Assembly: GCF_964204865.1 (NCBI RefSeq)
Contig: NC_135260.1
Location: forward strand, 14,260,001 to 14,324,000
Length of the DNA: 64,000 nucleotides
Direction of reading: 5' to 3'
From: Styela clava
Lineage: Eukaryota
Part shown: in pieces, positions 41,952 to 64,000 of the stretch
Layout: every line of letters begins with the position of its first letter
How positions within the stretch are numbered: position 1 is the stretch's first letter
The notes under the pieces: generated by a model
Seen by the model: only the letters and a program-made list of their open reading frames with translations
Told to the model about the DNA's origin: nothing
Databases searched by the model: none
Translations under genes and position numbers: made by a program

Positions 41952-44900
41952 AGCTCATAATAACCAAACGTCGAGGAATGTACTTAATTGTACATATGAT
42001 TTCACACCTATCCCAAACAACTCCAAAAGATTGCTTAGTTCACACATAAAAGCAAACTTCAAAATTTATGTAAATTTTTATTTTCAATACATAAAATACA
42101 AAAAAAAATTTAGTCTGTGTTCACGTCTGTCGAAAAGTTCCATGGTGGTTTATATTTGTATCCGCCTGCATGAAAATATTAACACTTGTTTCAACAAAAT
42201 ATTTTTTTTTTAAAATAGTAATAGAATGGTTTTTGAGTTCATCTTATTTCATCGTATATTTGTTTTTACTGCCAAGCCATCTCCACTATATTTAACACAA
42301 AATCCAATATCTGCATCCAACAAAACTGTAGTACTAAACGAAATTCAATACTTATCCAGAAATATAACCATACATAGTGGAAGATATATATTTGAAATAT
42401 AATATATATGATATAGAATACATAAGAATAAAGTTATCTTTTTAATCGAATGTGCATTAGGCTAATAATTGTATTCAAATTAATTTGAATAGTAATTACC
42501 ATCTTCACTTTGTTCCTTTAACTTATCCGCCTTACGTTTGTTGCCAAAGTATGGGACTTGTCTTGGTAGAAATTCCATGCGATTGACGAATGGTTTTCCT
42601 AATAAAATATTTGTAGTTGATCAGTTTTCATAAACAACGTCAAAAAATAATAAATTATCATTGAAAGAAACATTGAAATAATTTTTGGCGAACAAAATCC
42701 GTATCTGAGTTTTAAACAGGCGAGCATCTACTTAAAATAACTAAACGGGATCAACTTCATTCATTGAGCGAATCATTAATAAGTACATTATTAATTGATA
42801 TATGGGATTGAATAACATGTGCCTCATCATACCTTTCTGTCTTTTGACAGGCATGCCAAGTCTCGTCTCCAAGTTGGAACTTATTCCATAATGACCTGAA
42901 TAATATTATCTTAAATATTTATTTGAGTTTAACTATCCATTACGAAAAAATTAATATTCTAAACCAAATCTGGGTAACAATTAACAAGAAGTGTTTTATA
43001 TACTTGGTCGTCCACACCAAATAACTACTGATATACATAAAAATAGCTCTCCATGCAGCATACGAATTAATCGTATCACTGAAAGTTATACAATTAACAA
43101 GTTGGTCTGTGGACATTTTATCGTATGTATTACTTTTTAATGTAACCGATTAAAACCTTTCCGTCTAACATCCAATTGTAAGAAAATATGTATAACAATT
43201 GGCATGTTTGCAAGAGGACATAAACAAAATCAAACCGTTTGTCCAATTTCTTTTGTAGAAATCCAATTTTCTGTTTAATCTTGGTAGTTTTGTCACGTAT
43301 GGCTAAAAATGAAACCAAAATTAGAAAAGAACTATTTACAAAAGCCCACATTATTTTAAATGACATATATTCGTTCACTAAATCGCAACAAGTAAGTAAT
43401 CGCAATAAAACATTTAAATATTTTTATGTTCATAACAGTGACTTTGAAACTAAAACTTAATCTTGTATGTATAGTATAAAAAAATAAAACCAGTAGCCAA
43501 CTTCTAACCAAATAAACTTTTTATAGTTTCAATGATCTTCTGGTGTACCGGCTCAAATAAGTAAAAATAAAAATATCCAAAAAATTATTTACCTCGAACG
43601 TAGCTTTTTGCCTTTTTGGTTTTGTTTTTTCTAATGCAGTAAGAGAAAAATCCCAAAGTGGAGGGCTTTCCTCGTTCGCGGAACAGTCTAAAATTAAAAT
43701 GAGCTTTTTTAGCTTTTTTTGTTTAAAATTAATTTATCATGTGTTTTTCTGAATGTAATTTTAAGTACAGTATTTAAATTTGAAAAGCTAACGCACAAGG
43801 AAAAGTTCTTAAATTGTTTCATAAAAGCATCATAAATTACCAATTTCTATTTCCTCCATTATTTCTTCATCTTCCTCATTTTCCTCGTCCTCTTTTGGCA
43901 TCATGGCTTCATCCCGACTGCCGTAGTCCTGTTCTGTTACTTGCATGCGATTGTTGAATTTGTCTGAATACAATAAATAAAATGAGAGTTCTAATTTATG
44001 CTACAGTCACGCAACTATACTTATTACGCTACTATATTAATAAGAATAAATGTGTATGGTTAATTAAAATATACTTGTTATACAGGAAACATTACGTATA
44101 TACCTTTATATCGCTTAATAACTGGCATTCCAGGACTTGGTTTTTGTTTCTCAGGCTCGTGGTGCGCTGAAATTATAACAAAGTATAAGCTTCTATTGCT
44201 TCTATGTTATATTATTCTTAGTGTTGTAGTAATATTTTTGCATCAGATGTAAGTGCAATCATTTCATATCATGAGGTAGGTCCCTGAAGTCTTCAAACTT
44301 CCTCATTATTAAGAAAACGAAATGAATATTTAAACCAACCCCATTTATTTTTTCCTCTTCGAAAATACCATTCCTCATTTGAGTGCATTCCTTCTTTCTG
44401 AAAAATAATATGGGATTTTGGAAACTATCTCAAAAAATGGAAATAAGAAACATCCCAATCATTTCTATACCTCGGCCATAGCTCCTTGTTTGTTTTTCAT
44501 TGAATTTCTTCTAATCGGAGCAAAAGGAAAATTCCGAAGTCGAAGAATTACATCGTTTGTAGAACAGTCTGAAAATAAAATTAATATCTAGTTTTCATCC
44601 ATTTTAATCAACTTATCAAGCGATTCAGATTGTCTAATTCTAAAGTGCTTGGATTTTTCAAGCAGACCTACGGTATGAAAAGTTCAAAAGTTTTCATGAA
44701 ATTACCAAGATAATTTCTTAAGTTACCAATTTCAATTTCCTCCCTTATTTCTTTTTCATCTTCATCCTCATGTTTTGTTGAAGTTTTGACTTCTTTTCGC
44801 CGATTGCCGTAATTCGGTCTCGGCATTTGATGGCGATTGTTGATTTTTTCTGGAAGACAATAAGAGCAATAATATTTCGATCTTTTACAGCTGATAGGTG

Positions 44901-47346
44901 ACTGAAAATAGCGATGATAGTGATATTGAATAATTCAGTTAAAGCCCTGAACAATCAAACAATTTCATTGGCCTTTTTTTGGACAACTCACTGTTTTTCC
45001 ATAAATATTGCTTGAGCGAAATAATAAATATATCAAATTTGAGGTATGCTTGTAATTATAATTATATCCTATGTTATACCTTTATATCGCCCAACTGGTA
45101 TTCCAGAATTTGATTTTCCTTTGTCTGGTTTATGGTATACTAAAAATAATGGACAATTGTAATGTTATATTGTTACTATATAGAAAGAATTCTGGGGGCA
45201 TATTGGTAAATAGACGACTAACGAAAAATAATAATTAACGAGTGTTTCATTCATTTATTATTTTTTATTTTATTCGAGATTTTCTCGGTTTGTAAAATTT
45301 CTAATGACTGAATGAACCAACCCAATTTCTTTTCTTCTTTGCGGGAATCCATTTTTTCCTTTGACTTCTGTGATTTTGTGAGTTCGGTTCGATTTTTCAC
45401 CTAGAATTGTATTTTATTTAAAATATTCATGTTAATGAATGTTAATGCGATATAGTGAAAATATCTTGAAAAATTGTTATTGTTTTTACCTTTTTTGTGG
45501 ACTTCACTGTCTTCAAACCGTCCATCTGCGATTCCTTCTTAGTCGAAGTTGAAAGTCGTGAATCATGTGCTTTGGTTGAGATTTTATCCATCGAACGAGA
45601 CTTTTGTTTAACTGTCTGAACTTCTCGAACCTATAGCAGGAAAACATAATATATTACATGGATTCAGTTTACTGATAGAATTGTACTAGCCACTATGCTG
45701 TTTTGGATATTTTAATTTTTTAATACATGGTTTATTTTCTTGTTCATGTCAATGAAAGCTATGCTCTTTCGCAATTTGCTATGCATAGACAGTCAGTATA
45801 TTTTAATAATCTTATGAGAGTCATATTCACAAATTTCTCATATTTAGGTACTAGAGCTAGCACAGGGATAATTGAAACAAACCCAATACAGAACGGGCGA
45901 CCCCTCTTCATTACCATGAGATTATTGGAACGAAGCACTACTCTTTAAGATTAAGTGTTCAATATCTGGACTCGTCTTTTTATACTACCTTGATGATTTT
46001 CGTGCAACTCGAAGATTTTTCTACATCGCCCATGTGTGAACCGATCTCATCTTCATTGGTATTAGAAGTTGCAAGATTAGGTTCGCTGGGAACTGGGACT
46101 GGTTTCGAGTTCATTAAACCGTCTTTGCCTTTTCCTTTTTTATTCTTGGACTGTGGTTAATATATGCAAACAATAAAGCTAAAGCTGTGTCTATGTAAAT
46201 CACAAAATTAATTCAGATTTAAATTTTTTTGAATATTGCAATACAGCAAAGCACATATAAATAATTTAAAATATATGAAATGAATTTGCTTTATATTTTT
46301 TCCTTGGTTATAAATTATCGTATTATTATGATAATATTCAACATACATTTGTTATAATCTCTTTGGGTGCTTCACCTTTCCTCTTCTTGAGAAAGTTTTT
46401 TAACACCTTTATAAAATTAAATAATACGATAAATATGAAAAATATCTTAAGTCTGGAATGATTTCTTTATTGTACCTTTTTTGTGGTCTTCGCTGTTTTC
46501 CCATCGTTCATTTGTGTTTTCATTTTAGTTGTTTTCTTGGTTGAATTTGGAAGAAGGGAAACGCGTTGTCGGAGTGGAAATTTTTGGACCATGAAACCAA
46601 ACTTGCGTTCAAATTTCGGTATTTTTTGACCCTATAGCAGGAAAATCATATCCTAATATTCAATGTACTGACAGAATTGTATAAGACAGTATTTTGGGTA
46701 TTCAAGTAGCTATGTTGTTGTGTGTTTTGCTAAGCATTGTAAGTCGGTATATTTACTTACTTATTCATATTATTGCAGTACAACCTGGCTTCCATTTTTG
46801 CCGTTTGTGTTTACTGTACCTATTTTACCTATGTGATGGGTTCCAGTATTGTATAGTAAAATACTATTATAATAATAATATATATCATACTGATTTTATA
46901 TTTCCTTTCGGTACTTTATCTTTCTTCCCCTTCACTTGCTTCTAAAAACAATATGATTTACTTAAAAGCATTAAATAATAAATACGGAAAACTTCTAGTA
47001 TGTGGAATCATCATTTTGTATTACTTTTGACTTCGCTGCCCCCATATCGTTCATTTGCGATTCCTTGTTAGTTAAACTTTTGTGCGATGCTGGAAGATTT
47101 GTTTTGAGTGTTTTGCGCGGAATAGAATGTATTGCACGCATCTTGTCATCACTTTTCTTCCGAGGTCCTTGATCCTATGATATGAAATCCACATCCTAAT
47201 ACTTGTACTGTGGGTAATAAATTCAATCATTACTGCGTACATCTATGAAATATGATCTGTCGATCAAATGAAAAACCTCATTTAAAACTTGGTTTTGGAA
47301 TAGTAGTAAAGGCCACTTTTCAATATTTGTGTTGCTGTCATATTTG
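41952..47346. repeat. Segmental/tandem duplication, copy A of the part visible twice
   Basis: Collinear, roughly mid-90s % identity by eye with 58594-64000 (offset ~16.6 kb), across exons and introns; similarity starts at AGCTCATAAT. Confidence 0.97.
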
Positions 47347-50300
47347 TTTTAATATAGTTATACAGGACACTCTGAAAAATTATCATTTCTCTCCGATCAT
47401 TATGCTTCAGAAAAACAGTTTACAATTTTGTTACATCACTATCTGTTGTCATCCATTCATGCTAATAAAATCAATATTATTTCATTTTTTCTCGGAGGTG
47501 AAATCTAGACTCATCTTTTTTAATTGCCATAATAATTGTTTTGAAATTCACATTATCCCACCATAATATGGAGTATAATATTATTACATTCAATTTAATT
47601 ATAATAATTTTCAACATACAGTTTTTATATTTTCTTTGGATGCTTTATTTTTAAATTTTCTTCTGAAAAATAATATGATCTACTTGTGAAATATAATATT
47701 AAATACAATAAATATCGTAATTTCAAAAGTATCATTTTTATGTTACCTTTTTTGTGGACTCCGTTGTTTTTACATTGTCCTTCTTCGATTCAAACTTTGT
47801 CGAACTTTTGCTCGATGTCGTAAGAAGTGCAGCGCGTACTTTTTTCTGAACTTTTTGATCCTATAGTAAGGAAATGATGTTGTAATACTTGTACTAATGT
47901 GACTGCACATATCGATAGCACTATCATTGATCAGCTTTTTGCTTTGTATTTATGGGCAGTATATATTACCTATTTTATTATAGATATGTTTACCTCGACT
48001 CTACATTATACGTCGGTACGAAGTTTAAATTTACAGTATTATGGAATAGAATGATATTGGGAAAAATTCAACATACTGATTCTGTATTTCCTTTCGACAC
48101 TTCAACCTTCTTTTTTTGCCTCTGAAAACGATATAATTTACTTAAAAATATTGAATAAAAATAGTAAAATAACTGGCATCTGGAATCAAAATGTGTAATA
48201 CCTTTGTGAATTTCGAAGAAAACTTCTCTGCCTCTAGATCGCTCGTCTGAGTTGCCTTCTCAATGAAACTTTTGTTTGATTGTGGTAGATGAGAATCGAG
48301 TTCTTGTAACGGAATAGGATCGATTACACTCATCTCGTCCTCATTTTTCTCCTGAATATGTCGTTCCTTTTTCGTAAAATCAATGTTATATTACTTGTTT
48401 AGTAAACCCTATTGCTCATCAACTGAGTAAGTAGATAAAACTTTCAAATAATAGGTAATTAAGGCTACACTTTCTATTTGTGCTAGGTACGTAAATAAAA
48501 CAAGAGATCATCTCCTTTTTAGGTGAAGTAAATTAGTCATGAAACGTCTTCTGTTGTAGTTGCTAATTAAACTAGATAGATAGATATTAATCTGACTCCA
48601 AACAGAATATATAATAGGTTCCTTATTCAAGTCGAGATGTCTGTTAATTTGATATAACAGCAAGGATCTAGACAATTGCCTGTATAGATTTTATTTCCTT
48701 CGATAAATATATTACAATAAATTAAATCAAATAAACCAACTTACAAATTTAAGTTATTATTCTCAACAGTAGAGATCATCAGATTATTAATATTTGACGA
48801 TAATGATGACGATCTCTTCTATGTTCGAGATCGCATTTAAAGGGGTACAACAATTTTCTCGATTATTCGAGACCGTTCTTACACAGATTGTTCATGTAAA
48901 ACAAGGTCATTCGACATATCACACAGGAAATTATTCGCTATTTCGCATGTTATGTTGAAATATCATATTGGAATGTTCTTGAATATTCTCCAATATTTAT
49001 GACTTTGGAATTATTTTTAGCCTTGATGTCATTATTTCCAAAATTATTGGTTAATTTGTTACAGTCAAAATAATTTACTTCTATTACTTACCAGGATTTT
49101 TCCTGCCCGATCGAAGTCTCCGTTTCCGTCCCCTTTTTCGGCGGACTTCTTTTTTTTGTCATCTACTACTGCCATTTGATTTGGAAATGTAGAGTTTTCC
49201 TCCATGGTGCCGTCAATAGTAATAGATGCAGTCTATAAAAATATATCAGATATGTTTTGTCCTATGTTTGCGATACAAGTAGCGTGATAATAATCTTTGC
49301 AGTCCGTATCGCAGTTCTGCAAATCTTTCTTTCGTATGCGGCGGAAATTTAATGGCAAAAAAATGGTATCACGTACAAAAAAATTGAAACTTAAAACAAA
49401 GCTACGAATCTTTTCATTCGAATGAAAAAAATGGAAAAATTCGCGACTCTTGAAATGAAATTAAATAGAAAATTGAAACTCATCTTTTTATAATACCTTG
49501 ATGATATTCGTGGAATTCGGTGATGGCTCCACATCGCCCACATGTGAACCCATCTCAACTGCTTTCGTAATTTTAATTACGTGATCTGGTTCGCATGCTA
49601 TGATTGGCTTCAAATTCATCGATTGGTCTTTGTCATTTGTGTGTTTTTTTTGATCCTATGTTATGAGAATAATGATATATAATTGAACTGTAATTAATAT
49701 ACTCGAATAATAAATACTGCGTGTATCACTAATTTTAATAAGGCCAACTTTAACGGGTTATAAAAATCATTGGCCACGAAAATGTTATTTTATAAAGCTT
49801 AGGTCAAGTAAGTTTAGGCAAAAAATTCACCCCAAACGAGAGATCGGTGTTTTTAGATTGAACTTCGTCTTCCCGACCAAGTTTTTCATTTTTTGTCAAT
49901 TCATTAGTTATTGCAACGTTTTCCGGTGAATGGATTGAAGATGTCAACTTTTTTTCGGTAACATCTTTGATCGAAGTGGCTGCCGCCTATAAAGATGTAA
50001 TGGGTGAAATGATGTAAGATGCTGTGAATAAGTTCACGATAATGGCAGCGCGAGTAGGAGTTCCACATGTATCCAATACTGTATTTTTGCTATCTTGTTC
50101 ATTACCATATATTTTGGGAACTCGACATTACAAAGTTCCTTACTTCAGTGGGATTTCACATTATTTAAAAGCGATACTTTCACGTAGAATGAGATTCTCT
50201 ACCTATGTGTGGAAACACTTCAAATATTTGAGACTGTGTCATGTAATCTAATATTTCATACAACACTTCGCTAACCATACTACTCCACAATTCCATTGCA

Positions 50301-53300
50301 TCAAGATTCCGAGGCCATGATAAATGGACTCATAATCATGAATGTTCAAATCTTTTCACAAGGCCAAATTAAGCAAAGGATTTTTTGCATATTAAAGAAA
50401 GTAACCTTTGTTTGCACATCTCCTACATCAAGATGTTGTTCATCTGACAAAGTCGTCCTGTCCACTACTGGTGTATGGCTCGGAGACGTTGAAATATCTT
50501 CAGCAGCACTTTCGACAGAAGTGCCAGATATAGTCTGAAGTAAATGTCATATGTTTAATTTTCGTGATGATAACGAAAGCAACAATATTTGATGTTGTGT
50601 ATTTTGCCTCCTTTTTACATATATGGTGTGAACAATGGAACAAGTTGGTAAGGATTCACGTTTATTTTCGCGCGGGAGCAATTATCAATATCACAATCAG
50701 TATTATCAGTAACTTACGCTTAAATCGAGATGAGAATATTTGCACTATTATTTGGTCTCGTTGATAATACGTAGCAATAATAATACCTTATTGATTTTTG
50801 TTGACTCCGGCATTCTTTCCACCTCGTCCATGCAAGATCCCACCGAATTTGCTTCGTAACAGATTGAAGTTACTGTGTGAGCAATGATTGCAGAAATTTT
50901 AGTAGCTAAATCTGATGCAACTATTTCATTTACACTCTTTACTTGAATTGGAAAGAAACCGGGTGTTGGTGTAGGTGGTATGTTTTGCATATCTTCTTCC
51001 GACTCCTCCAGGATGGGTGAAAGTGTTTGACGGTATGGATAATATTCCGGTTCCGTATTAAACTCAGAAGACTCGTCTTCCAATGAGTTCACTTGCTCTT
51101 TATCGTTGATACCAAGATTAGAAAAAAATGCTAATTCCGGTTTAAATTCACGTGGATATTTGCCGTACGCCCATGAGGGCCTACATTGGAAGTTTTCATT
51201 TTCATTTCGTGGTTTTGTCATTTGGTAATCGCCAATCGAAACGGGAAAATGTATTGTTTTTGAGTGCGTTTTAGATGGCTCATGTATATAACCAGGTACA
51301 GATGAAGAACCTGCGCTCTTAGGTCTTTGTTGGAAGGAATGAGGTACATGCACGTCAAAAGGTTTTGATGGTCCAGTAAATCTTTGAGGTACTAATGCCT
51401 TTAAATTTGGCGAAGAAGGGTATTTTTTGAGCTGTGATTTTTTTAATATTCTCACTTCAGCTGCACCACGAGGAATGTCGGGGAGAGAATTAGCTGAACG
51501 TAGAATTTGAATATATTTATTTGCAGGTTTCCTGGTAAATGTCATTGCCATTCTTGATCTGATGGGAGGTTCTTCTTCTGAGTCTAGCTGACTCAGGTCG
51601 AGTTTCGGAACACAAAGGTTTCTAACTGATTTGACCGGATGTAGCTGTGGCCATGACGACGAACTACGTATCCCTGCCATTGTCATCCTTCCTCTGATGA
51701 CAGGTTCTTCTTCCGAGTCTAGCAGACTCAGATCAAGTTTTGGAACACAGAGATTTCTAAGTGATTTGACCGGATCTAGCTGTGGCCATGACGCACTACG
51801 TTTACATGTCGATTGTTGTTTGCTAATTTCTTCAGCATGGGGCAAGTAGAGAAAAGAAGATTTTATTTGTAATTCCTCGTTCTTTGCTATCTCAGGAATC
51901 TGAGATAAATTTGGAAGAGATGATGGTATGTTCACAGATTTTGTATTCCGAAAATGGGTAACGACTGTACATGGCCCAGTAACTGGATCGTGAGAAGAAG
52001 ATGTTTTATCTCCTTCTCCTTCATATACTTTGCTCAAGTCTAGTTTCGGAATAGCAATAATCGGATCTTCTATTTTTTCCCTCGATTCGGCGTGTATTAA
52101 ATCAAGATTTTGGGTTTGTTCGCCTGAATCGGATAAAACCGAACTTGTAGCGGATGGCTGGTTCAAATGTTGTGGCAATTTCAATCGCCTGATCAAATCT
52201 AACAAACAAGCAGAAATATGCAATTGTGAGAATTCCCTATCAATTGTACTCGGACTCAGGTAAAATAGATCAGGGCTGGAGGATGTAGATATCGGATTTA
52301 ATAATTTCCCACTATTTATTTGCACTCCTGCTTGAAGTAAATTTGTATACGACACACTAGTACGAAATGCGAATTCGCGGACTTGTAATTCTTTTTTCTC
52401 AATTACCAGACTTGATTCAGACAAAATGGATGCTTGATCAACGAGAAAATTTGTGTCTTCCTTTCTGGGGACAAGTTGATTTCCATCAATTTTTTCAACA
52501 AGAGCATGCGATAATGGCGACTTTGATTCGCGCGGTTGTCCACCTGTTACATCAAGATCCGGTGCTGTAAGGCAATGTTCCATGTTCTGGGATTCTCCCT
52601 CTTTGAAATCGATCATTCGTGGAGATGAATGTCTTGCTGGCATTGACATTTCAAAGTCTAAATGATCTGATTGTTTGGAGGAGGCAGAAATGGGAGAAGC
52701 AGATAATTTTGTAATTGCAATTTCATTAGATTGCTTTCTCAAGTCTGGACAGGATACAGAAATGTACAAACTCGATTCCATTTTCACCAGTACTTCACTT
52801 TGGTGAAATAAATTAGGTAATGAAACAGACATCTTCAAACAAGATTTTGCGGCGATCATTACAGATGAACTCGATCTAAGTACGGAGACGTACTTCGATG
52901 TTGTTTTCCCAAATTCTCCATCAAGAACTAACTGGTTCGTTACAATTCTTGTGGCGGACTGGAAAGCAGGTGTATTCGCGTCGATATTATTAAGCGCGAG
53001 CATTGGGGTATCAACATTGTCCTTTTGACTGCTGAAACCGCATAAATCAGGCAAAGATGGCAGCTGTGATGGTATTTTCCTTTCCGTCTCTAGGCGAATC
53101 AAACTCGGGCATGAAGCAGAAAGTGATCGTCTAGCCAACTGCAAAATTCCCGATTCCACCTTTTGATTCAACAAATCTGAGCACGACGCAGAAACATGCA
53201 AACGCGATTTCATTATGCCATCCAATGTACCGAATACATATTTCAGATTCGGACAAGAGACGGTTGCTTTGAAATATGATGATTTTGCGATGTGCAGTTC

Positions 53301-56300
53301 CATAACTCTTTGGCATAGATTTGGATATGATGCCCAAGTGTGAAATGATGTTTGGCGATAATTCATTTTGGCAATAAGTTCTTTTAATTCGGCGTCGAAG
53401 CCGCAGGCCTCAGAAGATTGTGAATCAGCGCACAGAAGACTTTCTAACGAACTATATTCGTCATGATTTGCTTCTTTTGGCATCTAACAAGGTAAAAATT
53501 TTATGTAGAACTATCGTGTCGAGTTATGGACAAAGAAAAAGGCTAGTTATACTTGCTTAGATATCGTAAGAGTATATATAGAGAGTGGCATTTATCAGCT
53601 TTTGATGACCTAAAATGGGAGAGAGTAATAAACTACTGACGTGTTAAAGATGTGAGCTCTTTTTGATTCAAGTGATCATTCGAGGACAACTGATACGATT
53701 TTCAAAAAAAAGAATGAAATTGTAGGTATACAAATATTTTGTTTGTTTTTCAAATATTTTGCTTTCTTGCAGCTATTATCATTCGACATATAATATGTTA
53801 CCTGTGAGACAGTGCCGGAAGTAACAGTCTCATTTAAAGTTGTAACTGTGCCTGCAGACGGATGAGGCTGTTGGTTTACGCCCCTCGACTTGGTGACTGC
53901 ACTCTCCAAACAAGGATGGTAATCAGATCCAGTTTCATTTTCTTGGACTGGAACCTAAATATGAAAGCATTTGTTTAGGTGTATGATGGAGATTTAAGGT
54001 GACAGAGTCTGAACACAACAGTATTAGCAGCAACGTGGTATGCAATCTTGGTCCCTACAATCAGCCTATACATTATACTATATTTGCATAAACAGCGTTT
54101 TGGAAGCCAAGACAGCAGATCAAAGCTCACACACAATGCAGCATTTTCCCGGCTCTCAAAGGGCCACGCTTTTGACATACAGTCTAGTCCTAGTGGCATC
54201 CATTGAGCAGACGAATGTCTGACAGGTGCGGTAATCGCAATGAGACTCCACGCAAACAACAACTGCTTGCGTCTAATAGATCTGTCGAGAATCATATCTA
54301 TATTTTGTTTTTCCAATACGATCATTCTATTTGTGTTGAGATCATATTTAGTTTCATCCTAACGAGATTGTTGGACAGGAAAGTATAATTGTGACATGTG
54401 TCCCCCCACTATGAATCCGCAGATAAAAAAAAAAGGTTAGGCTTATGGATATGGAGTTTGGTTCCAAACTAGTGAAAAAACAGGAACGAGCACAAAAAGA
54501 CAAACGGACTAGTGGCCGTTTTGCTTTTGACCATTGTTTCTTGGTTGAATGGGCACATTCTTTCATGAGGCATAGGAGATCTCAAGCCCCCGTACGTGAA
54601 GATTACAGCTAGGCTACTCGGAATCCATAAAAAACATGTCTAACATGAAATTAATGCTTAGATTGTCTTGGAGAAAGGTTTACTCGAGTTCGTGACTTAA
54701 GGGATGGGGCGTTAGTTAATGGGCGCGCAGAAATGACGTACGACAAGTATCAATTGCGCCTACAGAATTAAACGTGAAGTAAGACAGAAGTAGGTTTGAT
54801 CATTAGGATAACAGGTATTTTCAGAAGTACAATAAAGAGTAAAGATTTAGGAAGGAGAGTCAGTTTAATACACAATAACCTGCACCCTCTAGTAATTGTT
54901 ACACGCTTGCTCAAATTTAGGACCAGCAGTTTTATAACAACCACGCAAATCCATGCCTAAACTGAGAGTAGGCAAATAGTAAAATTTATCATCTTCAACC
55001 GAGAATTTATCGGCTGGTTGCAAATAAATAGCGGGAAACTTACCGACAAGCCCGTCCCTATTGGCATTATTGAGTAAATGACGTAGTCATATATATATAA
55101 AGAAATTATATAACATATATTTGTTACCTTATTCTTTTTTGCCAGTCGAAAAATTTTCAGGATCCATAACAATCCTGCAAGAAAGCAGTTTAAGGATGTG
55201 GGCGAAGGTCCCGAACCCTCGGAGTTCTTTGAATCCTGCAAAACAAGCAATATTCAGCGATTCTAATGGGTATGGGTATAATTGTGTCTAGAACAGAAGT
55301 GCACTACACAAGGCACGTATGCCCAATGTGGCACCTCGAAGTTCGAACGTGGTTCGTGAACGGTTTAGTAAAAAATAATTCTGACATTTATATTAAATCA
55401 TAATGTTTATTCACACTACGGTAGCAAGGCGTTAGGGTGAAACGTGATTTTTTATATTTACCGCAAATCGCAGTAAAGCGCGTTTGAATCGCGATCATTT
55501 TATTAATCGACACATACCTAGCTCCTTGTTCTATCAGAAACAGTAGCCTAATTAACAAATAGTCTCAATGTCCAATTTGACAACATTTTGTTAACCCTTA
55601 TGAACTTTTCTGTTTCCAAAGTAATATGTAGGCTACCAATCGCTTTCTCAATACTAACACCGAAATGCTTGTATACTTTCGCACTGGATTTTCCTATTGC
55701 GGGCATTCTCAATCATGCAAATTTCAGCTACGGACTTGATTCACGGATGAACATTAGATCAGTTGTTCTCAACCTTTTTTCGGTTTGCGGACTGATGCAA
55801 AAGAAAACAATCCAATTTATTGAGAAATTTGCAGCTGTCTTGTTGATATTACACGTGTTAAACGCGGTTCTAATGAAGTTTCTGCAAGGCGAAGTAGAAC
55901 GTTGACTTCCACATGATTTGGTGAGCTTTGCGGGTTTCATTGCGTTGTTTGGAAGAATTCTGGTGCAGTCTAGGCACATGGGAAGCGGTACTTTTTCGCT
56001 GCTGTGAGCAATAGTGAAACCTAGCTCCAAATACTTCTTATCATACTGCCTAATAAGGTCTTCCTTTCGTTTTTTGCTTGTTTCTTCATGATCCATATCA
56101 ACATTGCTGTAAGGTCGTTTCGGGACATGTTGTAAAGTTGAAGTAGCAGTCTCTTCCTCTATCCTGTCAACATCACTAACTTGGTTTTCACCGCTGGGTT
56201 TCTTTCAGAGAACTGGATAATATTTTGTTGTTTGTTTGCCTCCTTTTTACTAGCAAACATCGCTAAATTATTTGCCCACTGTCAAATTAAGGAACGTGCG

Positions 56301-57677
56301 AACTGCGAAGTTCTCAATCAGGTACCGTACTATGTGCTATCAAACTCCTCCGTTATGAATTTACCCGTCGTTATGAGGTCATAGACTTAACGAACATTCA
56401 GCCGTTCAGGGATTGAAATGGACAGAGCACCTCCAACCAAGTTTGGTTGATAGAAGAATACCGGTACTGCAAATCAATAAGAGTTGGAAAATCTCAGAAT
56501 TAACGGACATGCCGTCAATACTTTGTTAAGAGTGGGATTCAAATTATCAATAGCTGGCGACTTTGTATTTTGAATTTTGTGCACCCTAAAATTAAGGATC
56601 GGTTTACAAACTACCGACAATAACTAAGGTCAGTCAACACCAACATTATTTTTTGAAAATATTAAAAAATCGTTGAGGTACAGTTATCGGAAAAGATTTT
56701 AATATATATATCTTTTATAGTGGACGGGATAATCTCAGTTTTTAAATTTATAAATCCCAAAATTTAGGGTCGGATTGAAAACTATCGACTATAACAGACT
56801 AAAGTTAGATAACACTAATATTTTTTTATTGGAATGAAATTATGATGAAATTATGAAGATATAGTTATCCAGAAAGATTTTAATATGGATTATATTGTGT
56901 ACGAGATTAGGAATTCATCGATGTGTTTGTTATTAAGCGCAAATATTCAGAAAATTATGAAGATACAATTATCCAGAAAGATTTTAATATAGATTCTATT
57001 GTGCGATATGAGAGATTCATCGATGTGTTTGTTATTAAGTGCAAATATTCTCGTTACCGCAATTGAATGCAATGATCTATATATATTAGGAATATCGCAA
57101 CTTCTAATGAAGTCAATGTTTTCCCGAGCATACAGTTCCTCGTTGATACGTGCCCTTTATTGTGCCCACAAATTTATGTGATTGTTAACTGGGCAGAATT
57201 CTGGGTGAGTCAGGGGTCGGCGAAACATGCATTGGACACCTAAGTTTGAGTAACGTTTTCATACGACTAAAGAAGACAAAGTAACGATCATTCTGAATCA
57301 AGCAGCGTCATTCCGGTCATGTGCATTTTCTAATCGAAAGTTCAATGTTTGATTGCTACATTTCGCCCAAGTTTTAAAAATAGTCACATAAGTACATTTA
57401 AAAATGTTCTTAGTTATTTTGAATATTCTAGAGACCAAAACATCTAGGTTTTAACTTCGTTTTATCGTTCACAATTACTTTATATACTCCAGTTCGATTT
57501 CATTAGTAACACTATTTTGCTAGAAATCAGCAAATATTAGAATTTAGCAGTTCATCCTCTCACCTTCTTTTTGGTAATTTTAGACTTGGCTCTCCTTTTG
57601 TTAGAAACCTTTTTACTCGAAGTTCCTTCTTTTCGTGAAATGTCGTTTCCGACGTCCACCTTTTTTCTCAATTTCAT
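42110..57677 (-). CDS. Uncharacterised ~1880-aa largely disordered, Ser/Lys-rich modular protein (copy 1); ~30 exons
   Basis: Hand-built GT-AG, phase-consistent model (5'->3'): 57564-57677, 55128-55235, 53802-53954, 50787-53483, 50406-50534, 49831-49986, 49497-49655, 49092-49232, 48202-48351, 48077-48121, 47747-47860, [47620-47662, 43 nt, out of frame], 47025-47174, 46891-46941, 46476-46631, 46347-46385, 45989-46150, 45490-45630, 45322-45400, 45080-45139, 44727-44849, 44471-44568, 44340-44397, 44104-44166, 43841-43963, 43593-43687, 43236-43302, 42833-42895, 42500-42598, 42110-42165 (TAA). AATAAA at 42077-42082 on the minus strand. Open throughout if the 43-nt exon is skipped. Confidence 0.8.
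50787..53483 (-). CDS. Giant internal exon (2697 nt, 899 codons) of the modular gene
   Basis: The 911-aa ORF is bounded by acceptor TAG at 53484-53486 and donor AAG|GTATTA at 50787/50786, phase 0 at both ends. The last 12 ORF residues are intronic read-through. Confidence 0.9.
51541..51800 (-). repeat. Two-copy 135-nt (45-aa) coding tandem repeat
   Basis: SASWPQLDPVKSLRNLCVPKLDLSLLDSEEEPVIRGRMTM vs SSSWPQLHPVKSVRNLCVPKLDLSQLDSEEEPPIRSRMAM; GGTTCTTCTTC anchors at 51568 and 51703. Confidence 0.92.
53990..54450 (-). mobile_element. Decayed non-LTR retrotransposon RT fragment (CR1/L2-like) in intron 2 of the modular gene
   Basis: Minus-strand fragments in RT order: NRMIVLEK, SDIRL/SMDA, LDCMSKA, IAYHVAANT, resembling YRPIS..LEK, DDIRLAMD, LDLSKAF, YHxYADDT. 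Confidence 0.35.
55760..56460 (-). mobile_element. Internally deleted hAT/Buster (ZBED5/SCAND3-like) transposon
   Basis: Terminus CAGTTGTTCTCAACCTTTTTT at 55760 preceded by CATTAGAT (nnnTAnnn); minus-strand RQYDKKYLELGFT...PLPMCLDCTRILPNNAMKPAKL is the characteristic Buster transposase N-terminal zinc-finger segment; the other terminus is not cleanly recognisable. Confidence 0.8.
56585..57050. repeat. Degenerate intronic tandem repeats (~170-bp pair overlapping a ~105-bp pair)
   Basis: AAAGATTTTAATAT with similar flanks occurs three times (~56690, ~56870, ~56975); 56848-56948 and 56951-57050 are near-identical. Confidence 0.75.
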
Positions 57678-58593: not shown

Positions 58594-61500
58594 AGCTCAT
58601 AATGAACAAAATGTCGAGGAATGTAGTTGTACATATGATTTCACACCTATCCCAAACAACTCCAAACGAGTGTTTAGTTCACATATAAAAGCAATCTTCA
58701 AAATTATGAAAAATTTTATTTTCAATACATAAAATGCAGGAAAAAATTTAGTCTGCGTTCACGTCTGTCGAAAAGTTCCACGGTGGTTTATATTTGTATC
58801 CGCCTGCATGAAATCATTAACACGTTTCAACGAAAAGAATTTTTTTTTAAATAGTAATAGAATGGTTTTTGAGTTAATCTTATTTCATCTCGTATATTTG
58901 TTTTTACTGTCAGGCCATCTTCACTATATTTAACACAAAATCCAATATCTGCATCCAACAAAACTGTAGTACTAAACGAAATTCAATACTTATCCAGAAA
59001 TATAACCAACCATAGTGGAAGACATTTGAAATATGATATAGAATACATAGAAATAAAGATATCTTTTTAATCGAATGTGCATTAGGCTAATAATTTTATT
59101 CAAATTAATTTGAATAGTAATTACCATCTTCACTTTGTTCCTTTAACTTATCCGCCTTACGTTTGTTGCCAAAGTATGGGATTTGTCTTGGTAGAAATTC
59201 CATGCGATTGACGAATGGTTTTCCTAATAAAATAAATTAATTTGATCAGTTTTCATGAACAACGTCAAAAAATAATAAATTATCATTGAAATAAAATTTT
59301 AGCAAACAAAACCCCTATCTGAGTTTTAAACAGGCGAGCATCTACTTAAAATGACTGAACGGTATTAACTTCATTCATAGAGCGAATCATTAATAAGTAC
59401 ATTAATAAATTGATACATGGGATTGAATAAGATGTGCTTCATCATACCTTTCTGTCTTTTGACAGGCATGCCAAGTCTCGTCTCCAAGTTGGAACTTATT
59501 CCATAATGACCTGAATAATTTTATCTTAAATATTTATTTGTGTTTAACTATCCATTACGAAGAAGTTAATATTCTAAACCAAATCTGGGTAACAATTAAC
59601 AAGAAGTGTTTTATATACTTGGTCGTCCACACTAAATAACTACGGATATACATAAAAATAGCTCTCCATGCAGCATACGAATTGATCGTATCACTGAAAG
59701 TTATACAATTAACAAGTTGGTCTGTGGGCATTTTATTGTATGTATTACTGTTTACTGTAGCCGATTAAAACCTTTCCGTCTAACATCCAATTGTAAGAAA
59801 ATATGTATAACAATTGGCATGTTTACAAGTGGACATAAACAAAATCAAAACGTTTGTCCAATTTCTTTTGTAGAAATCCAATTTTCTGTTTAATCTTGGT
59901 AGTGTTGTCACGTATGACTGAAAATGAGGCCAAAATTAGAAAAGAACTATATACACAAGCTCACATTATTTTATATGATATATATTCGTTCACCAAATCG
60001 CAACAAGTAAGTAATCGCAATAAAACATTTAAATATTTTCATGTTCATAACAGTAACTCTGAAATTCAAACTTAATCTTATATGTATAGTATAAAAAAAT
60101 AAAACCAGTAGCCAGCCAACTTCTTACCAAATGAACTTTTTATAGTTTCAATGATCTTCTGGTGTACCGGCTCAAATAAGTAAAAATAAAAATACCCAAA
60201 AAATTCTTTACCTCGAACGTAGCTTTTTACCTTTTTGGTTTTGTTTTTTCTAATGCAGTAAGAGAAAAATCCCAAAGTGGAGGGCTTTCCTCGTTCGCGG
60301 AACAGTCTAAAATTAAAATGAGCTTTTTAGCTTTTTTCGTTTAAAATTAATTTATCATGTGTTTTTCCGCACGTAATTTTAAGTACAGTATTTGAATTTG
60401 AAAAGCTAACGCACAAGGAAAAGTTCTTAAATTGTTTCATAAAAGCATCATAAATTACCAATTTCTATTTCCTCCATTATTTCTTCATCTTCCTCGTTTT
60501 CCTCGTCCTCTTTTGGCATCATGGCTTCATCCCGACTGCCGTAGTCCTGTTCTGTTATTTGCATGCGATTGTTGAATTTGTCTGGATACAATCAATAAAA
60601 TGAGAGTTCTAATTTATGCTACAGTCACGTAACTATACTTATTACGCTACTATATTAATAAGAATAAATGTGTATGGTTAATTAAAATATACTTGTTATA
60701 CAGGAAACATTACGTATATACCTTTATATCGCTTAATAACTGGCATTCCAGGACTTGGTTTTTGTTCCTCAGGCTCGCGGTGCGATGAAATTATTACCAA
60801 GTATAAGCTTCTATTGCTTCTATGTTATATTATTCCTAGTGTTGTAATAATATTTCTGCATCGGATGTAAGTGCAATCATTTCATATCATAAAGTAGTTT
60901 CCTGAAGTCTTCGAACTTCCTCATTATTAAGAAAACGAAATGAATATTTAAACCAACCCCATTTATGTTTTCCTCTTCGAAAATATCATTCCTCATTTGA
61001 GTGCATTCCTTCTTTCTGAAAAATAATATGGGATTTTGGAAACTATCTCAAAAAATGGAAATAAGAAAAATCCTAATCATTTCTATACCTCGGCCATAGC
61101 TCCTTGTTTGTTCTTCATTGATTTTCTTCTAATCGGAGCAAAAGGAAAATTTCTAAGTCAAAGAATTACATCGTTTGTAGAACAGTCTGAAAATAAAATT
61201 AATATCTAGTTTTCATTCATTTTAATCAACTTATCAAGCGAATCAGATTGTCTAATTCTAAAGAGCTTGAATTTTTCAAGCAAACCTACGGTATGAAAAA
61301 TAGAAAAGTTCAAAAGTTAGCATGAAATTACCAAGATAATTTCTTAAATTACCAATTTCAATTTCCTCCCTTAATTTTTCTTCGTCTTCATCCTCATGAT
61401 TTGTTGAAGTTTTAACTTCTTTTCGCCGACTGCCGTAATTCGGTTTCGGCATTTGAAGGCGATTGTTGATTTTTTCTGGAAGACAATAAGAGCAATAATA

Positions 61501-64000
61501 TTTCGATCTTTCACAGCTGATAGGTGACTGAAAAAAGTGATGATAGTGATATTGAATAATTCAGTTCAAGCCCTGAACAATCAAACAATTTCATTGGCCT
61601 TTTTTTGGACAGGTTACTGTTTTTCCATAAATATTGCTTGAGCAAAATGATAAATATATCAAATTTGAGGTATGCTTGTAATATAATTATATCCTATGTT
61701 ATACCTTCATATCGCCCAACTGGTATTCCAGAATTTGATTTTCCTTTGTCTGGTTTATGGTATACTAAAAATAATGGACAATTGTAATGTTATATTGTTA
61801 CTATATAGAAAGAATTCTGGGGGCATATTGGTAAGTAGACGACTAACGAAAAATAATAATTAACGAGTGTTTCGTCCATTTATTATTTTTTATTTTATTC
61901 GAGATTTTCTCGGCTTGTAAAATTTCTAATGACTGAATGAACCAACCCAATTTCTTTTCTTCTTTGCGGGAATCCATTTTTTCATTTGAATTCTGTGATT
62001 TTGTGAGTTCGGTTCGATTTTTCACCTAGAATTATATTTCATTCCAATATAGTTCATTTAAAATGTTAATAAATGTTAATGCGATATAGTGAAAATATCT
62101 TGAAAAATTGTTATTGTTTTGTTTTTACCTTTTTTGTGGACTTCACTGTCTTCAAACCGTCCATCTGCGATTCCTTCTTAGTCGACCTCTTAGTCGAAGT
62201 TGAAAGTCGTGAATCATGTGCTTTGGTTGAGATTTTATCCATCGAACGGGACTTTTGTTTAACTGTCTGAAATTCTCGAACCTATAGCAGGATAATCATA
62301 ATATATTACATGGATTCAGTTTACTGATAGAATTGTACTAGCCACTATGCTGTTTTGGATATTTTAATTTTTTAATACATGGTTTATTTTCTTGTTCACG
62401 TCAAAGAAAGCTATGCTCTTTTGCAATTTGCTATGCATAGACAGTCAGTATATTTTAATATTCTTATGAGAGTCATATTCACAAATTTCTCATATTTAGG
62501 TACTAGAGCTAGCACAGGGATAATTTAAACAAATCCAATATAGAACGGGCGACCCCTCTTCATTACCATGAGATTATTGGAACGAATCACTACTCTTTAA
62601 GATTGAGTGTTCAATATCTGGACTCGTCTTTTTATACTACCTTGATGATTTTTGTGCAACTCGAAGATTTTTCCACATCGCCCATGTGTGAACCGATCTC
62701 ATCTTCATTGGTACTAGAAGTTGCAAGATTAGGTTCGCTGGAAACTGGGATTGGTTTCGAATTCATTAAACCGTCTTTGCCTTTTCCTCTTTTATTCTTG
62801 GACTGTGGTTAATATATGCAAACAATAAAGCTAAAGCTGGGTCTATGTAAATCACAAAATTAATTCAGATTTAAATTTTTTTGAATATCGCAATACAGCA
62901 AAGCACATATAAATAATTTAAAAGATATGAAATGAATTTGCTTTATATTTTTTCCTTGGTTATAAATTATCGTATTATTATGATAATATCCAACATACAT
63001 TTGTTATAATCTCTTTGGGTGCTTCACCTTTCCTCTTCTTGAGAAAGTTTTTTAACACCTTTATAAAATTAAATAATACGATAAATATGAAAAATATCTT
63101 AAGTCTGGAATGATTTCTTTATTGTACCTTTTTTGTGGTCTTCGCTGTTTTCCCATCGTTCATTTGTGTTTTCATTTTAGTTGTTTTCTTGGTTGAATTT
63201 GGAAGAAGGGAAACGCGTTGTCGGAGTGGAAATTTTCGGACCATGAAACCAAACTTGCGTTCAAATTTCGGCATTTTTTGACCCTATAGCAGGAAAATCA
63301 TATCATAATATTCAATGTACTGACAGAATTGTATAAGACAGTATTTTGGGTATTCAAGTAGCTATGTTGTTGTGTGTTTTGCTAAGCATTGTAAGTCGGT
63401 ATATTTACTTACTTATTCATATTATTGCAGTACAACCTGGCTTCCATTTTTGCCGTATGTGTTTACTGTACCTATTTTCCCTATGTGATGGGTTCCAGTA
63501 TTGTATAGTAAAATACTATTATAATAATAATATATATCATACTGATTTTATATTTCCTTTCGGTACTTTATCTTTCTTCCCCTTCACTTGCTTCTAAAAA
63601 CAATATGATTTACTTAAAAGCATTAAATAATAAATACGGAAAACTTCTAGTATGTGGAATCATCATTTTGTATTACTTTTGACTTCGCTGCCCCCATATC
63701 GTTCATTTGCGATTCCTTGTTAGTTAAACTTTTGTGCGATGCTGGAAGATTTGTTTCGAGTATTTTGCGCGTAATAGAATTTATTGCACGCATCTTGCCA
63801 TCACTTTTCTTCCGAGGTTCTTGATCCTATAATATGAAATCCATATATTAATACTTGTACTGTGGTTAATAAATTCAATCATTGCTGCGTACATCTATAG
63901 GGAATATGATCTGTCGATCAAATGGAAAATCTCATTTAAAACTTGGTTTTGGAATAATAGTAAAGGCCACTCTTCAATATTTGTGTTGCTGTCATATTTG
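58594..64000. repeat. Segmental/tandem duplication, copy B (runs off the window end)
   Basis: Matches 41952-47346; e.g. ORF pairs 43239/59854 and 46694/63346. Confidence 0.97.
58748..63826 (-). pseudogene. 3' part (18 exons) of the duplicate modular gene (copy 2); C-terminally truncated or pseudogenised
   Basis: Same exon series as 42110-47174 but with CGA>TGA (61158-61160), TGG>TGA (60986-60988), CAA>TAA (60227-60229), acceptor CAG>CAT (60785) and donor GT>TT (59850). Exons 61353-63826 remain open. Confidence 0.75.

What the first reader, a model, noticed from the sequence alone, without database searches (positions are those of the whole stretch)
42110..57677. Hidden ~30-exon, ~1880-aa orphan gene built by serial exon-module duplication
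The ORF track shows only the 911-aa exon, but 29 further small exons can be chained with canonical splice sites. Seen in sequence: exons 1-18 all have phase-0 junctions, so any internal one could be skipped freely. Three families recur: type A 'DQK....ESQMxDxKxxKSTKK' (47747, 47025, 46476, 45490), alternating Lys-rich micro-exons 'KK..PKGN.KS' (48077, 47620, 46891, 46347), and type C 'GSH[VM]GDVE.S...T.IIK' (end of giant exon, 49497, 45989). Their flanking introns are also homologous (repeated CTATAGCAGGAAA acceptors on the + strand). I recognise no globular domain. Inference: a lineage-specific, fast-evolving disordered scaffold with large combinatorial splicing potential; the Lys-rich repeats suggest a germline/sperm or cytoskeletal role, but that is a guess.
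Basis: partly seen in the sequence, partly recalled or inferred. Interest (0 to 1): 0.78.

Follow-up and report, generated by a model that had tools for sequence, protein, structure and literature searches.

The report
Modular orphan gene, sea-squirt five-copy family
The predicted many-exon gene is real: it is one of five near-identical copies in the sea squirt Styela clava, it was built by repeated copying of small exons, NCBI already lists its sister copies as uncharacterised proteins, and its function is still unknown.

Summary
On the minus strand, 57677 to 42110, 29 exons with canonical splice sites give an open 1,894-codon frame. They match, exon for exon, the RefSeq protein "uncharacterized protein LOC120334243 isoform X1" of Styela clava, which is a sister copy 115 kb away (94.5% identical).

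Spliced contigs from four public runs show 13 of the 15 tested junctions cleanly. The other two are seen only in part.

One claimed micro-exon (47662-47620) is 43 nt here. It breaks the frame and is skipped in all four runs.

The gene is not a singleton. The same contig carries five copies, four intact and one pseudogene that starts about 1 kb upstream.

Duplication is nested:
- repeats inside the giant exon
- five [A-exon + micro-exon] units with homologous introns
- three type-C exon ends
- three rounds of a four-exon C-terminal module
- whole-gene copies

No relative outside S. clava turned up among 1.84 billion representative proteins, and there was no Pfam or PDB match.

Most RNA differences match the sister copies, so expression of this particular copy is only weakly shown. 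Function is unknown. The sperm or cytoskeleton guess could not be tested.

The scan found a similar exon-amplified gene elsewhere in this genome (s1-822885). It is a different gene.

The parts
57564..57677 (-). exon 1 (38 codons, ATG at 57677, Lys/Arg-rich)
   Evidence: Open and phase 0, donor GT. 33 of 38 residues match P0003 residues 1-38. The 261-nt stretch around it is 96-97% conserved upstream of the three intact sister copies. Not tested with reads.
55128..55235 (-). exon 1b (36 codons, holds the hydrophobic stretch LNCFLAGLLWILKIF)
   Evidence: AG/GT sites, phase 0. 36 of 36 residues match P0003 39-74. Not tested with reads.
53802..53954 (-). exon 2 (51 codons)
   Evidence: 48 of 51 identical to P0003. 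96-97% DNA identity in L002-L004. Not tested with reads.
50787..53483 (-). exon 3, the giant exon (899 codons). It holds 16 S-x-S-x-P-x-L-like motifs and old internal repeats.
   Evidence: ORF. Donor GT at 50786. Joint 50787/50534 seen in X2 and X3. Four intact copies. Motif count 16 against a shuffle mean of 1.25 and maximum of 6, with a pattern fitted after the fact. Internal repeats found.
51543..51793 (-). 135-nt tandem repeat inside the giant exon (a 45-aa unit, twice)
   Evidence: TRF: period 135, 1.9 copies, 87% matches. Protein repeat 561-600 against 606-645, 80% identical.
50406..50534 (-). exon 4 (43 codons)
   Evidence: Joint to the giant exon in X2 and X3. The joint to exon 5 is listed only as 49988/50429 with 15 letters between, which I read as the same junction in a form 6 nt shorter.
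49831..49986 (-). exon 5 (52 codons)
   Evidence: Joint 49654/49830 (cut +1) in X1 and X2.
49497..49655 (-). exon 6C (53 codons, DQK start and type-C end GSHVGDVE..IIK)
   Evidence: Joints on both sides. 76% identical over 117 nt to exon 15C (D3).
49092..49232 (-). exon 7 (47 codons)
   Evidence: Joint 49232/49497 in X1-X3. The link to exon 8 is seen only as loose ends at 49091 and 48367.
48202..48366 (-). exon 8A (55 codons, A-type). An alternative acceptor lies 15 nt downstream at 48351.
   Evidence: Loose ends place the acceptor at 48366. A RefSeq isoform of a sister copy lacks exactly these 5 residues. Aligns with the A family.
48077..48121 (-). micro-exon 9m (15 codons)
   Evidence: Joints 48121/48202 (X2, X3) and 47859/48076 (4 of 4 runs). 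Family D2.
47747..47860 (-). exon 10A (38 codons)
   Evidence: Joints on both sides in 4 of 4 runs. Family D1.
47620..47662 (-). Decayed cassette micro-exon. It is 43 nt here and breaks the frame, 42 nt and in frame in copies 2 and 3, and deleted in copies 4 and 5.
   Evidence: Skipped by joint 47173/47746 in 4 of 4 runs. One X3 joint 47658/47747 with 3 letters between fits a 42-nt form (my reading).
47025..47174 (-). exon 11A (50 codons)
   Evidence: Joints in 4 of 4 runs.
46891..46941 (-). micro-exon 12m (17 codons)
   Evidence: Joints 46941/47025 and 46630/46890 in 4 of 4 runs.
46476..46631 (-). exon 13A (52 codons), a cassette in a sister copy's RefSeq isoform
   Evidence: P0001 lacks these 52 residues.
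46347..46406 (-). micro-exon 14m (20 codons), an alternatively spliced cassette
   Evidence: Included in X2 (joints 46404/46474 and 46150/46347). Skipped in X3 record 12, which goes from 46476 straight to 46150. RefSeq isoforms lack it.
45989..46150 (-). exon 15C (54 codons, type-C end)
   Evidence: pieces with 0 other letters in 4 runs..
45490..45630 (-). exon 16A (47 codons)
   Evidence: Joints 45628/45987 (4 of 4 runs) and 45398/45488 (X2, X4).
45322..45400 (-). exon 17 (79 nt, phase 0 to 1), first exon of C-terminal module round 1
   Evidence: Joint 45139/45322 in 4 of 4 runs.
45080..45139 (-). exon 18 (60 nt, phase 1-1), a cassette in RefSeq isoforms of sister copies
   Evidence: The loose end at 45080 carries the start of exon 19 in X2, X3 and X4..
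44727..44849 (-). exon 19 (123 nt, phase 1-1)
   Evidence: Repeat families D6 and D7 against exon 23. Its link to exon 18 is seen as a loose end.
44471..44568 (-). exon 20 (98 nt, phase 1-0)
   Evidence: Junctions not tested with reads.
44340..44397 (-). exon 21 (58 nt, phase 0-1), module round 2
   Evidence: Junctions not tested with reads.
44104..44166 (-). exon 22 (63 nt, phase 1-1)
43841..43963 (-). exon 23 (123 nt, phase 1-1)
   Evidence: D6/D7.
43593..43687 (-). exon 24 (95 nt, phase 1-0)
43236..43302 (-). exon 25 (67 nt, phase 0-1), module round 3
42833..42895 (-). exon 26 (63 nt, phase 1-1)
42500..42598 (-). exon 27 (99 nt, phase 1-1)
42110..42165 (-). exon 28, last coding exon, stop TAA at 42112-42110
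58718..64000 (-). 3' part (exons 11A to 28) of the neighbouring copy 2, a pseudogene. It runs off the window's end.
   Evidence: stops in exons 20, 21 and 24, acceptor AT at exon 22, donor TT at exon 25. Outside the window, exon 7 is 2 nt short and the giant exon is split and carries one TAA.

Best explanation
This is a real protein-coding gene of the ascidian Styela clava. It lies on the minus strand from 57677 to 42110. It has 29 coding exons plus one decayed cassette and encodes 1,894 residues.

It is one of five copies on one contig, four intact and one pseudogene. No relatives are detectable outside the species.

Nested duplication built it:
- About 24-residue motif-bearing units and a 45-aa repeat inside the giant exon.
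- DNA-level tandem copying of [A-exon, short intron, micro-exon] units and of type-C exon ends.
- Three rounds of a four-exon C-terminal module.
- Most recently, whole-gene copies.

The middle exons all begin and end in phase 0, so single units can be gained, lost or skipped without breaking the frame. Transcripts use this: several cassettes are included or skipped.

Inferred function, not shown: a non-enzymatic scaffold or linker protein with three parts.
- A Ser-rich head carrying an array of S-x-S-x-P-x-L sites that look like phosphorylation or docking sites.
- A strongly basic, Lys-rich, low-hydropathy spacer whose length is set by cassette splicing.
- A basic, aromatic triple-repeat tail as the likely binding end.
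For: Open chain and splice sites:
- 29 exons, all AG/GT, 5,685 nt open.

Transcripts:
- 13 of the 15 junctions in the laid stretch appear as CT..AC joints, that is GT..AG on the minus strand, in contigs of 1 to 4 of 4 runs from 3 studies.
- The other two junctions are seen in part, and the 18-19 link appears as a loose end.
- The listed indels in exons are 6 and 3 nt. The one in an intron is 1 nt.

Public model:
- The exons tile RefSeq XP_077973931.1 (P0003) residues 1-1894 in order, 1,782 of 1,885 residues identical.

Copies:
- Five giant-exon copies on C14, four of them with 899 open codons.
- All small exons keep frame and splice sites in copies 3-5.

Constraint:
- dN/dS is 0.30-0.85 in the giant exon and 0.33-0.79 in the small exons.
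- dN is 0.013-0.028, against intron divergence of 0.049-0.059.

Duplication:
-. Intron homology reaches z 15.7.

Cassettes:
-.

No relatives:
- 2 hits among 1.84 billion representatives, one a sister copy and the other a weak repeat match.
-.
- No Pfam family and no PDB sequence match.

Composition:
- Middle part: 16.9% Lys, net charge +34, mean hydropathy -1.04.
- Tail: 8.8% aromatic residues, net charge +17.
Against: - Expression of this particular copy is weakly shown. Of the 40 listed RNA differences from the window, 30 carry the base of copies 4 and 5. Only one low-depth unspliced piece (X4, 47401-47660, 0 differences against 13 or more in every other copy) is specific to the window copy.
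- The runs are only guessed to be RNA.
- Junctions 1-1b, 1b-2, 2-3 and 19 to 28 were not tested with reads. They rest on conservation and on the sister copies' RefSeq models.
- The function is inference from composition and motifs alone.
- A crude charge-hydropathy measure puts 29 of 42 windows of the giant exon on the folded side, so 'scaffold without a fold' may be wrong for the head.
- dN/dS reaches 0.85 against the nearest intact copy, which is close to neutral.
Confidence: 0.85

Rival explanations
1. The window copy is a silent or dying duplicate. The spliced RNA seen comes from the sister copies, and this copy is intact only because it is young.
For: - 30 of 40 RNA differences match copies 4 and 5.
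- Most pieces fit a sister copy as well as, or better than, the window.
- Its 43-nt cassette is frame-broken.
- The neighbour 16.5 kb upstream is a pseudogene.
- It lacks the distal alternative first exon that the sister copies have about 4.6 kb further upstream.
- dN/dS is 0.85 against copy 4.
Against: - All 29 exons are open with canonical sites, while copy 2 has gathered at least seven disabling changes at similar divergence.
- One contig matches the window alone.
- Exon 1 and its upstream flank are 96-97% conserved.
Confidence: 0.2
2. It is a diverged member of a known conserved family, for example a cytoskeletal, ciliary or chromatin protein, that sequence searches cannot see.
For: - The tail has conserved aromatic and basic positions in three repeats.
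- The giant exon is not clearly disordered.
- The exons after the giant one went only to word-index searches, which carry length limits, and to the Pfam and PDB-sequence scans. The giant exon also went to the HMMER library. No fold search could be run.
Against: - phmmer of the giant exon against 1.84 billion representatives found only the species' own family.
- Pfam had no family above threshold on 20 of 29 exons scanned singly, or on the full sister protein.
- No PDB sequence match at E up to 1.
Confidence: 0.1
3. The chain is over-extended. The giant exon and the downstream Lys-rich exons are two separate genes, or the small exons are non-coding repeats.
For: The small exons are short and A-rich, and no ORF list shows them.
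Against: - One X2 contig (record 11, 1,750 letters) runs from the giant exon through exons 4, 5 and 6C. Other contigs link every later exon up to 19.
- Frames and splice sites are kept in three other copies.
- Exon dN is below the intron rate.
- The RefSeq model joins them.
Confidence: 0.03

Closest known systems
RefSeq 'uncharacterized protein' LOC120334243, LOC120334300 and LOC120348174 of Styela clava (XP_077973931.1 and other isoforms)
   Same: Same contig, same 29-exon order, 94.5% identical residues, same cassettes.
   Different: They are the sister copies 115, 228 and 250 kb away, not this locus. I could not learn whether the window copy has a RefSeq model of its own. The 42-nt cassette is 43 nt here.
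Modular disordered proteins built from phase-symmetric exons. I saw only the abstract of PMC3632108 (Schad et al., Nucleic Acids Res 2013). Titin PEVK and nebulin exon arrays are examples from recall.
   Same: Symmetric (0-0 and 1-1) exons, tandem exon duplication, low-hydropathy charged segments, cassette splicing.
   Different: No sequence relation. Here the units are two-exon and four-exon modules with their introns, and the whole gene is itself amplified.
Micro-exon genes (MEGs) of schistosomes (recalled, not read here)
   Same: Short symmetric exons that can be skipped to vary a protein.
   Different: Only 10 of 29 coding exons are 81 nt or shorter, and they give 602 of 5,685 nt. The N-terminus is Lys-rich, not signal-peptide-like. 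No sequence relation.
The other exon-amplified 'hidden giant gene' of this genome noted by the scan (s1-822885)
   Same: Same species, tandemly amplified phase-0 exons, already listed by NCBI as uncharacterised, no relatives.
   Different: A different piece of the genome and an acidic product. Not compared here.

Membership tests
S. clava LOC120334243-type gene family | Giant exon of 899 codons, more than 90% identical | tested here: met
   94-95% identity to three intact copies. 43-54 differences in 899 residues.
S. clava LOC120334243-type gene family | Colinear 29-exon structure with the same phases | tested here: met
   Exons tile P0003 residues 1-1894 without gaps other than split codons. 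All small exons are found in the copies.
S. clava LOC120334243-type gene family | Location in the C14 cluster | tested here: met
   All five copies lie within C14:14.31-14.56 Mb.
Any Pfam family | A hit at or above the gathering score | tested here: not met
   0 families for the giant ORF and for 19 small exons. The full sister protein gave only the CCT motif at 9.2 bits against a cut-off of 28.4.
Micro-exon genes (schistosome MEG type; definition recalled) | Most of the coding sequence made of symmetric micro-exons | tested here: not met
   602 of 5,685 coding nt lie in exons of 81 nt or less.
Micro-exon genes (schistosome MEG type; definition recalled) | Signal peptide, secreted product | not tested
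   No signal-peptide tool is on hand. Exon 1 is Lys/Arg-rich.
14-3-3 / AMPK-family type phospho-site arrays (consensus recalled) | Repeated basophilic Ser sites with Pro at +2 and Leu at +4, phosphorylated in vivo | tested here: inconclusive
   16 motif matches against a shuffle mean of 1.25, with a pattern fitted after the fact. Motif residues vary less among copies than expected (5 against 10.3, P = 0.04). Phosphorylation cannot be tested here.

The most novel reading that the evidence does not exclude
A species-restricted gene family in active birth and death at two levels: whole copies, and single cassette exons. The 42-nt cassette is intact in two copies, frame-broken in one and deleted in two. 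Copy choice plus cassette splicing would then give a varied set of Lys-rich spacers behind a head made of a new repeat of about 24 residues that carries a phospho-site.
Probability: 0.2. Interest if true: 0.55.

Novelty: new member of a known kind. Interest (0 to 1): 0.3.

Why it matters
It is a clean, datable example of how a long protein can be assembled from nothing recognisable. Copying happened at four nested scales: within an exon, two-exon units, four-exon units and the whole gene. Phase symmetry keeps every step in frame.

The five copies catch one cassette exon in three states: usable, frame-broken and deleted.

For annotation, it shows that the window copy is colinear with the RefSeq models of its sister copies, and that its upstream neighbour is a pseudogene.

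It does not open a long-standing question, and the function is unknown.

Tried and rejected
**Searches that found nothing**
- Pfam on the giant ORF, on 19 small exons and on the full sister protein.
- PDB sequences.
- Word-index protein searches with the 911-aa ORF (only proteins of about 500-1,600 aa were candidates) and with the 327-aa tail of P0003 (only about 180-570 aa).
- Papers naming the three LOC numbers: 0 among 8.1 million PMC papers and 0.36 million preprints.
- The search for Styela clava genome papers listed nothing on this family. I read none of those papers.

**Rejected**
- The one hit from another source (P0002, a 472-aa repeat protein from an ENA contig, E 1.4e-6) is a repeat-on-repeat match at 26% identity around SWP.L. 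I do not take it as a relative.

**Loose ends of contigs**
- The long loose ends at 45274, 45488 and 48393 are not in the window or in the fetched loci.
- They map to C2 and C1. The two loci compared (L013 on C2, L015 on C1) share nothing with this gene. I read them as chimeric contigs, not as alternative exons.

**Other steps**
- A plain blastp self-comparison of the giant exon returned only the diagonal. Windowed queries against a masked copy worked.
- A relic on C4 (44% identical over 128 aa, with stops) was seen and not followed further.

**Left out**
The window model was searched exon by exon. Whole-protein questions were put to the public sister proteins returned by the tools.

Full report
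**Observation**

An ORF list of 41-59 kb shows one long frame, 911 aa on the minus strand at 50748-53483. I read the minus strand and checked coordinates by script.

- 29 exons with AG acceptors and GT donors give one open frame of 5,685 nt, which is 1,894 aa plus stop.
- All boundaries from exon 1 to the start of exon 17 are phase 0.
- Exons 17-28 follow the phase pattern 0-1-1-1-0 three times.
If included, it shifts the frame into stops.

**RNA evidence**

The look-up of sequencing runs listed 12 holders from 4 studies. Eight are guessed to be RNA, and none is on record as RNA. I laid X1-X4 (3 studies) on 45050-51049.

Junctions:
- The stretch holds 15 predicted junctions, from giant exon to exon 4 through exon 17 to exon 18.
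- 13 are listed as joints whose skipped part begins CT and ends AC on the + strand. That is GT..AG on the minus strand. Each is seen in 1 to 4 of the 4 runs.
- Junction 4-5 appears only as a joint with 15 letters between. I read it as the same junction in a form 6 nt shorter.
- Junction 7-8 appears only as short loose ends. They place the exon 8 acceptor at 48366, 15 nt upstream of my first guess.
- The loose end at 45080 carries the start of exon 19 in X2, X3 and X4.

Cassettes:
- The joint 47173/47746 skips the 43-nt cassette in 4 of 4 runs.
- One X3 joint (47658/47747, 3 letters between) fits a 42-nt form of that cassette.
- Micro-exon 14m is included in X2 (and weakly in X4). It is skipped in X3 record 12, which passes from 46476 straight to 46150.

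Other points:
- Listed indels inside exons are 6 nt (49155) and 3 nt (49546). The listed 1-nt indel (48502) lies in an intron.
- The tool says 8 further joints and 131 pieces were not shown.

**Public annotation and copies**

A search of the window's own genome (377 Mb, 380 contigs) with the giant exon found five copies on contig C14:

| Copy | Start on C14 | State |
|---|---|---|
| Window copy | 14,310,787 | intact |
| Copy 2 | 14,327,278 | split, with a TAA |
| Copy 3 | 14,426,208 | intact, 94-95% identical to the window copy |
| Copy 4 | 14,538,956 | intact, 94-95% identical to the window copy |
| Copy 5 | 14,560,970 | intact, 94-95% identical to the window copy |

A 44%-identical relic with stops lies on C4.

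phmmer of the giant exon against 1.84 billion representative proteins gave 2 hits:
- P0001, 95% identical and 1,842 aa.
- P0002, a weak repeat match that I reject.

The source names P0001 and its cluster mate P0003 (1,894 aa) as "uncharacterized protein LOC120334243" isoforms X6 and X1 of Styela clava. A further cluster of 30 members, of which 15 were listed, holds isoforms of LOC120334243, LOC120334300 and LOC120348174. Comparing their giant-exon parts with the fetched loci places them:
- LOC120334243 is copy 3.
- LOC120334300 is copy 4.
- LOC120348174 is copy 5.

None of the listed proteins is the window copy's product. Fifteen members were not listed, so I cannot say whether the window locus has a model.

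The window's 29 exon peptides tile P0003 from residue 1 to 1894 in order. 1,782 of 1,885 residues are identical.

**Alternative forms in RefSeq**

Isoforms of the sister loci lack:
- exon 13A (52 aa)
- exon 14m (20 aa)
- exon 18 (20 aa)
- the first 5 residues of exon 8
- one Lys at an exon start

Others use other first exons. A distal first exon lies about 4.6 kb upstream of exon 1 in the sister copies, as 82% matches to the exon 1 stretch. The window copy has no such match. The 3' end of copy 2 lies about 1 kb upstream of its exon 1.

**Duplication architecture**

- *Inside the giant exon.* There is a 135-nt tandem repeat (80% identical at protein level). Older repeats also show: 91-150 against 235-293 (35%, E 9e-7) and 39-83 against 365-409 (31%, E 1e-4). 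Sixteen S-x-S-x-P-x-L-like motifs are often 24 residues apart (pattern fitted after the fact).
- *Middle part, A-exon plus micro-exon units.* Five [A-exon, 69-89-nt intron, micro-exon] units are present: 8A/9m, 10A/43-nt cassette, 11A/12m, 13A/14m and 16A/17.
  - Support comes (families D1, D2, D4, D5, D8) and the alignment.
  - A-exon DNA copies are 69-77% alike. The micro-exon copies, with their donor flank, are 60-82% alike.
- *Middle part, type-C ends and introns.* Three type-C ends are present: the giant exon's end, 6C and 15C (family D3 at 76% over 117 nt). Intron homology is significant for some pairs and decayed in the rest, so the copying was of DNA segments, introns included.
- *Tail.* Exons 17-20, 21-24 and 25-28 repeat a four-exon module. 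Rounds 1 and 2 are 886 nt apart. Evidence is families D6 (84%) and D7 (72%), and the peptide alignment. Their introns are mostly no longer alignable.
- *Whole gene.* The copies are 92.6-100% identical in the small exons with 20-nt flanks. The internal duplications are shared by all copies and are therefore older.

**Fate of copies and cassettes**

- Copies 3-5 keep frame and splice sites in all small exons examined. Exons 4-28 were examined; exons 1, 1b and 2 lay outside the fetched pieces.
- Copy 2 carries these disabling changes:
  - exon 7 is 2 nt short
  - stops in exons 20, 21 and 24
  - AT for AG at exon 22
  - TT for GT at exon 25
  - a broken giant exon
It does not agree that the damage is confined to the tail. 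The extra damage lies beyond the window's end.
- The small cassette is 42 nt and in frame in copies 2 and 3, 43 nt in the window copy, and deleted in copies 4 and 5.

**Constraint**

| Region | dN/dS | Other figures |
|---|---|---|
| Giant exon, between intact copies | 0.30-0.85 | dS 0.025-0.076 |
| Small exons, window against copies 3-5 | 0.33-0.79 | dN 0.013-0.027 |
| Introns, window against copies 3-5 | not applicable | divergence 0.049-0.059 |

Selection is weak but present. Four 899-codon frames without a stop point the same way.

**Which copy is expressed?**

Of 40 listed differences between the RNA contigs and the window, 22, 25, 30 and 30 carry the base of copies 2, 3, 4 and 5 respectively. 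Most pieces fit a sister copy at least as well as the window.

Only X4 record 21 fits the window alone. It covers 47401-47660, is unspliced, has depth 4.3 and shows 0 differences, against 13 or more in every other copy.

The junction evidence therefore holds for the family. Expression of this copy is only hinted at.

**What it may do**

| Region | Lys | Other composition | Net charge | Mean hydropathy |
|---|---|---|---|---|
| Head (giant exon) | 6.5% | 14% Ser | -7 | -0.43 |
| Middle | 16.9% | not noted | +34 | -1.04 |
| Tail | 13.8% | 8.2% Arg, 8.8% aromatic | +17 | -1.49 |

On a crude charge-hydropathy rule, the middle and tail fall on the disordered side (my calculation from the figures). 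For the giant exon, 29 of 42 windows fall on the folded side.

My best guess is a non-enzymatic scaffold with three parts:
- a motif-array head that is read by kinases or docking proteins (the resemblance to 14-3-3 / AMPK-type sites is from recall)
- a basic spacer whose length is set by cassette splicing
- a repeat tail that binds a partner

All of this is inference.

**Limits**

- Run metadata are coded, so no tissue is known.
- I left out the step of joining the window's exons for searches. The window model was searched exon by exon.
- Nine exons reached Pfam only through the sister protein P0003: 1b, 9m, 12m, 14m, 15C, 16A, 18, 21 and 28.

**Verdict**

It is already modelled by NCBI for three sister loci, and it belongs to a known kind: a lineage-restricted modular protein built from phase-symmetric exons. 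I saw only the abstract of PMC3632108 on that kind. No paper names these loci. Interest is modest.

Noticed in passing
window 55728-56096 (-) and about 55660-55708 (-): A 122-aa ORF in the intron between exon 1 and exon 1b has no Pfam hit at E up to 1. From recall, it looks like the N-terminal part of a hAT/ZBED-type transposase. Just downstream of it, the window reads M-P-A-I-G-K-S-S-A-K-V-Y-K-H-F-G before a GT. This resembles the alternative first exon (MRKPALGKSSAKVYKHFG) of RefSeq isoform X3 of sister locus LOC120334300. It may be an exonised transposon fragment.
   Followed up: partly
window about 58718-64000 and beyond (G000:C14:14318718-14329934): Copy 2 of the gene starts about 1 kb upstream of exon 1 and is a pseudogene with at least seven disabling changes. 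Some of them (exon 7, giant exon) lie beyond the window, so the damage is not confined to the tail exons.
   Followed up: yes
G000:C14:14437270-14437436, 14550371-14550537, 14571332-14571462, 14575494-14575649: 82%- and 79%-identical copies of the exon 1 stretch lie a few kb upstream of the sister copies. They probably are the alternative first exons seen in RefSeq isoforms X2 and X3. The window copy has none.
   Followed up: partly
G000:C4:3802813-3803163 (L007): A fragment 44% identical to residues 253-378 of the sister protein, with stops. It is a relic or a much older relative on another contig.
   Followed up: partly
window 50787-53483 (-), residues 52, 76, 100, 124 and 378, 402, 426 of the giant exon: The S-x-S-x-P-x-L-like motifs recur at exact 24-residue steps in two runs. 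Distant parts of the exon align at 31-40% identity. This suggests a repeat unit of about 24 residues, not scattered short motifs.
   Followed up: partly
Not part of this finding.
   Followed up: no
G000:C2:29010670-29011004 and C1:4204464-4204493: Long loose ends of contigs that touch 45274, 45488 and 48393 map to these places. The two loci compared (L013 on C2, L015 on C1) share nothing with this gene. They are probably chimeric contigs joined through A-rich words.
   Followed up: yes
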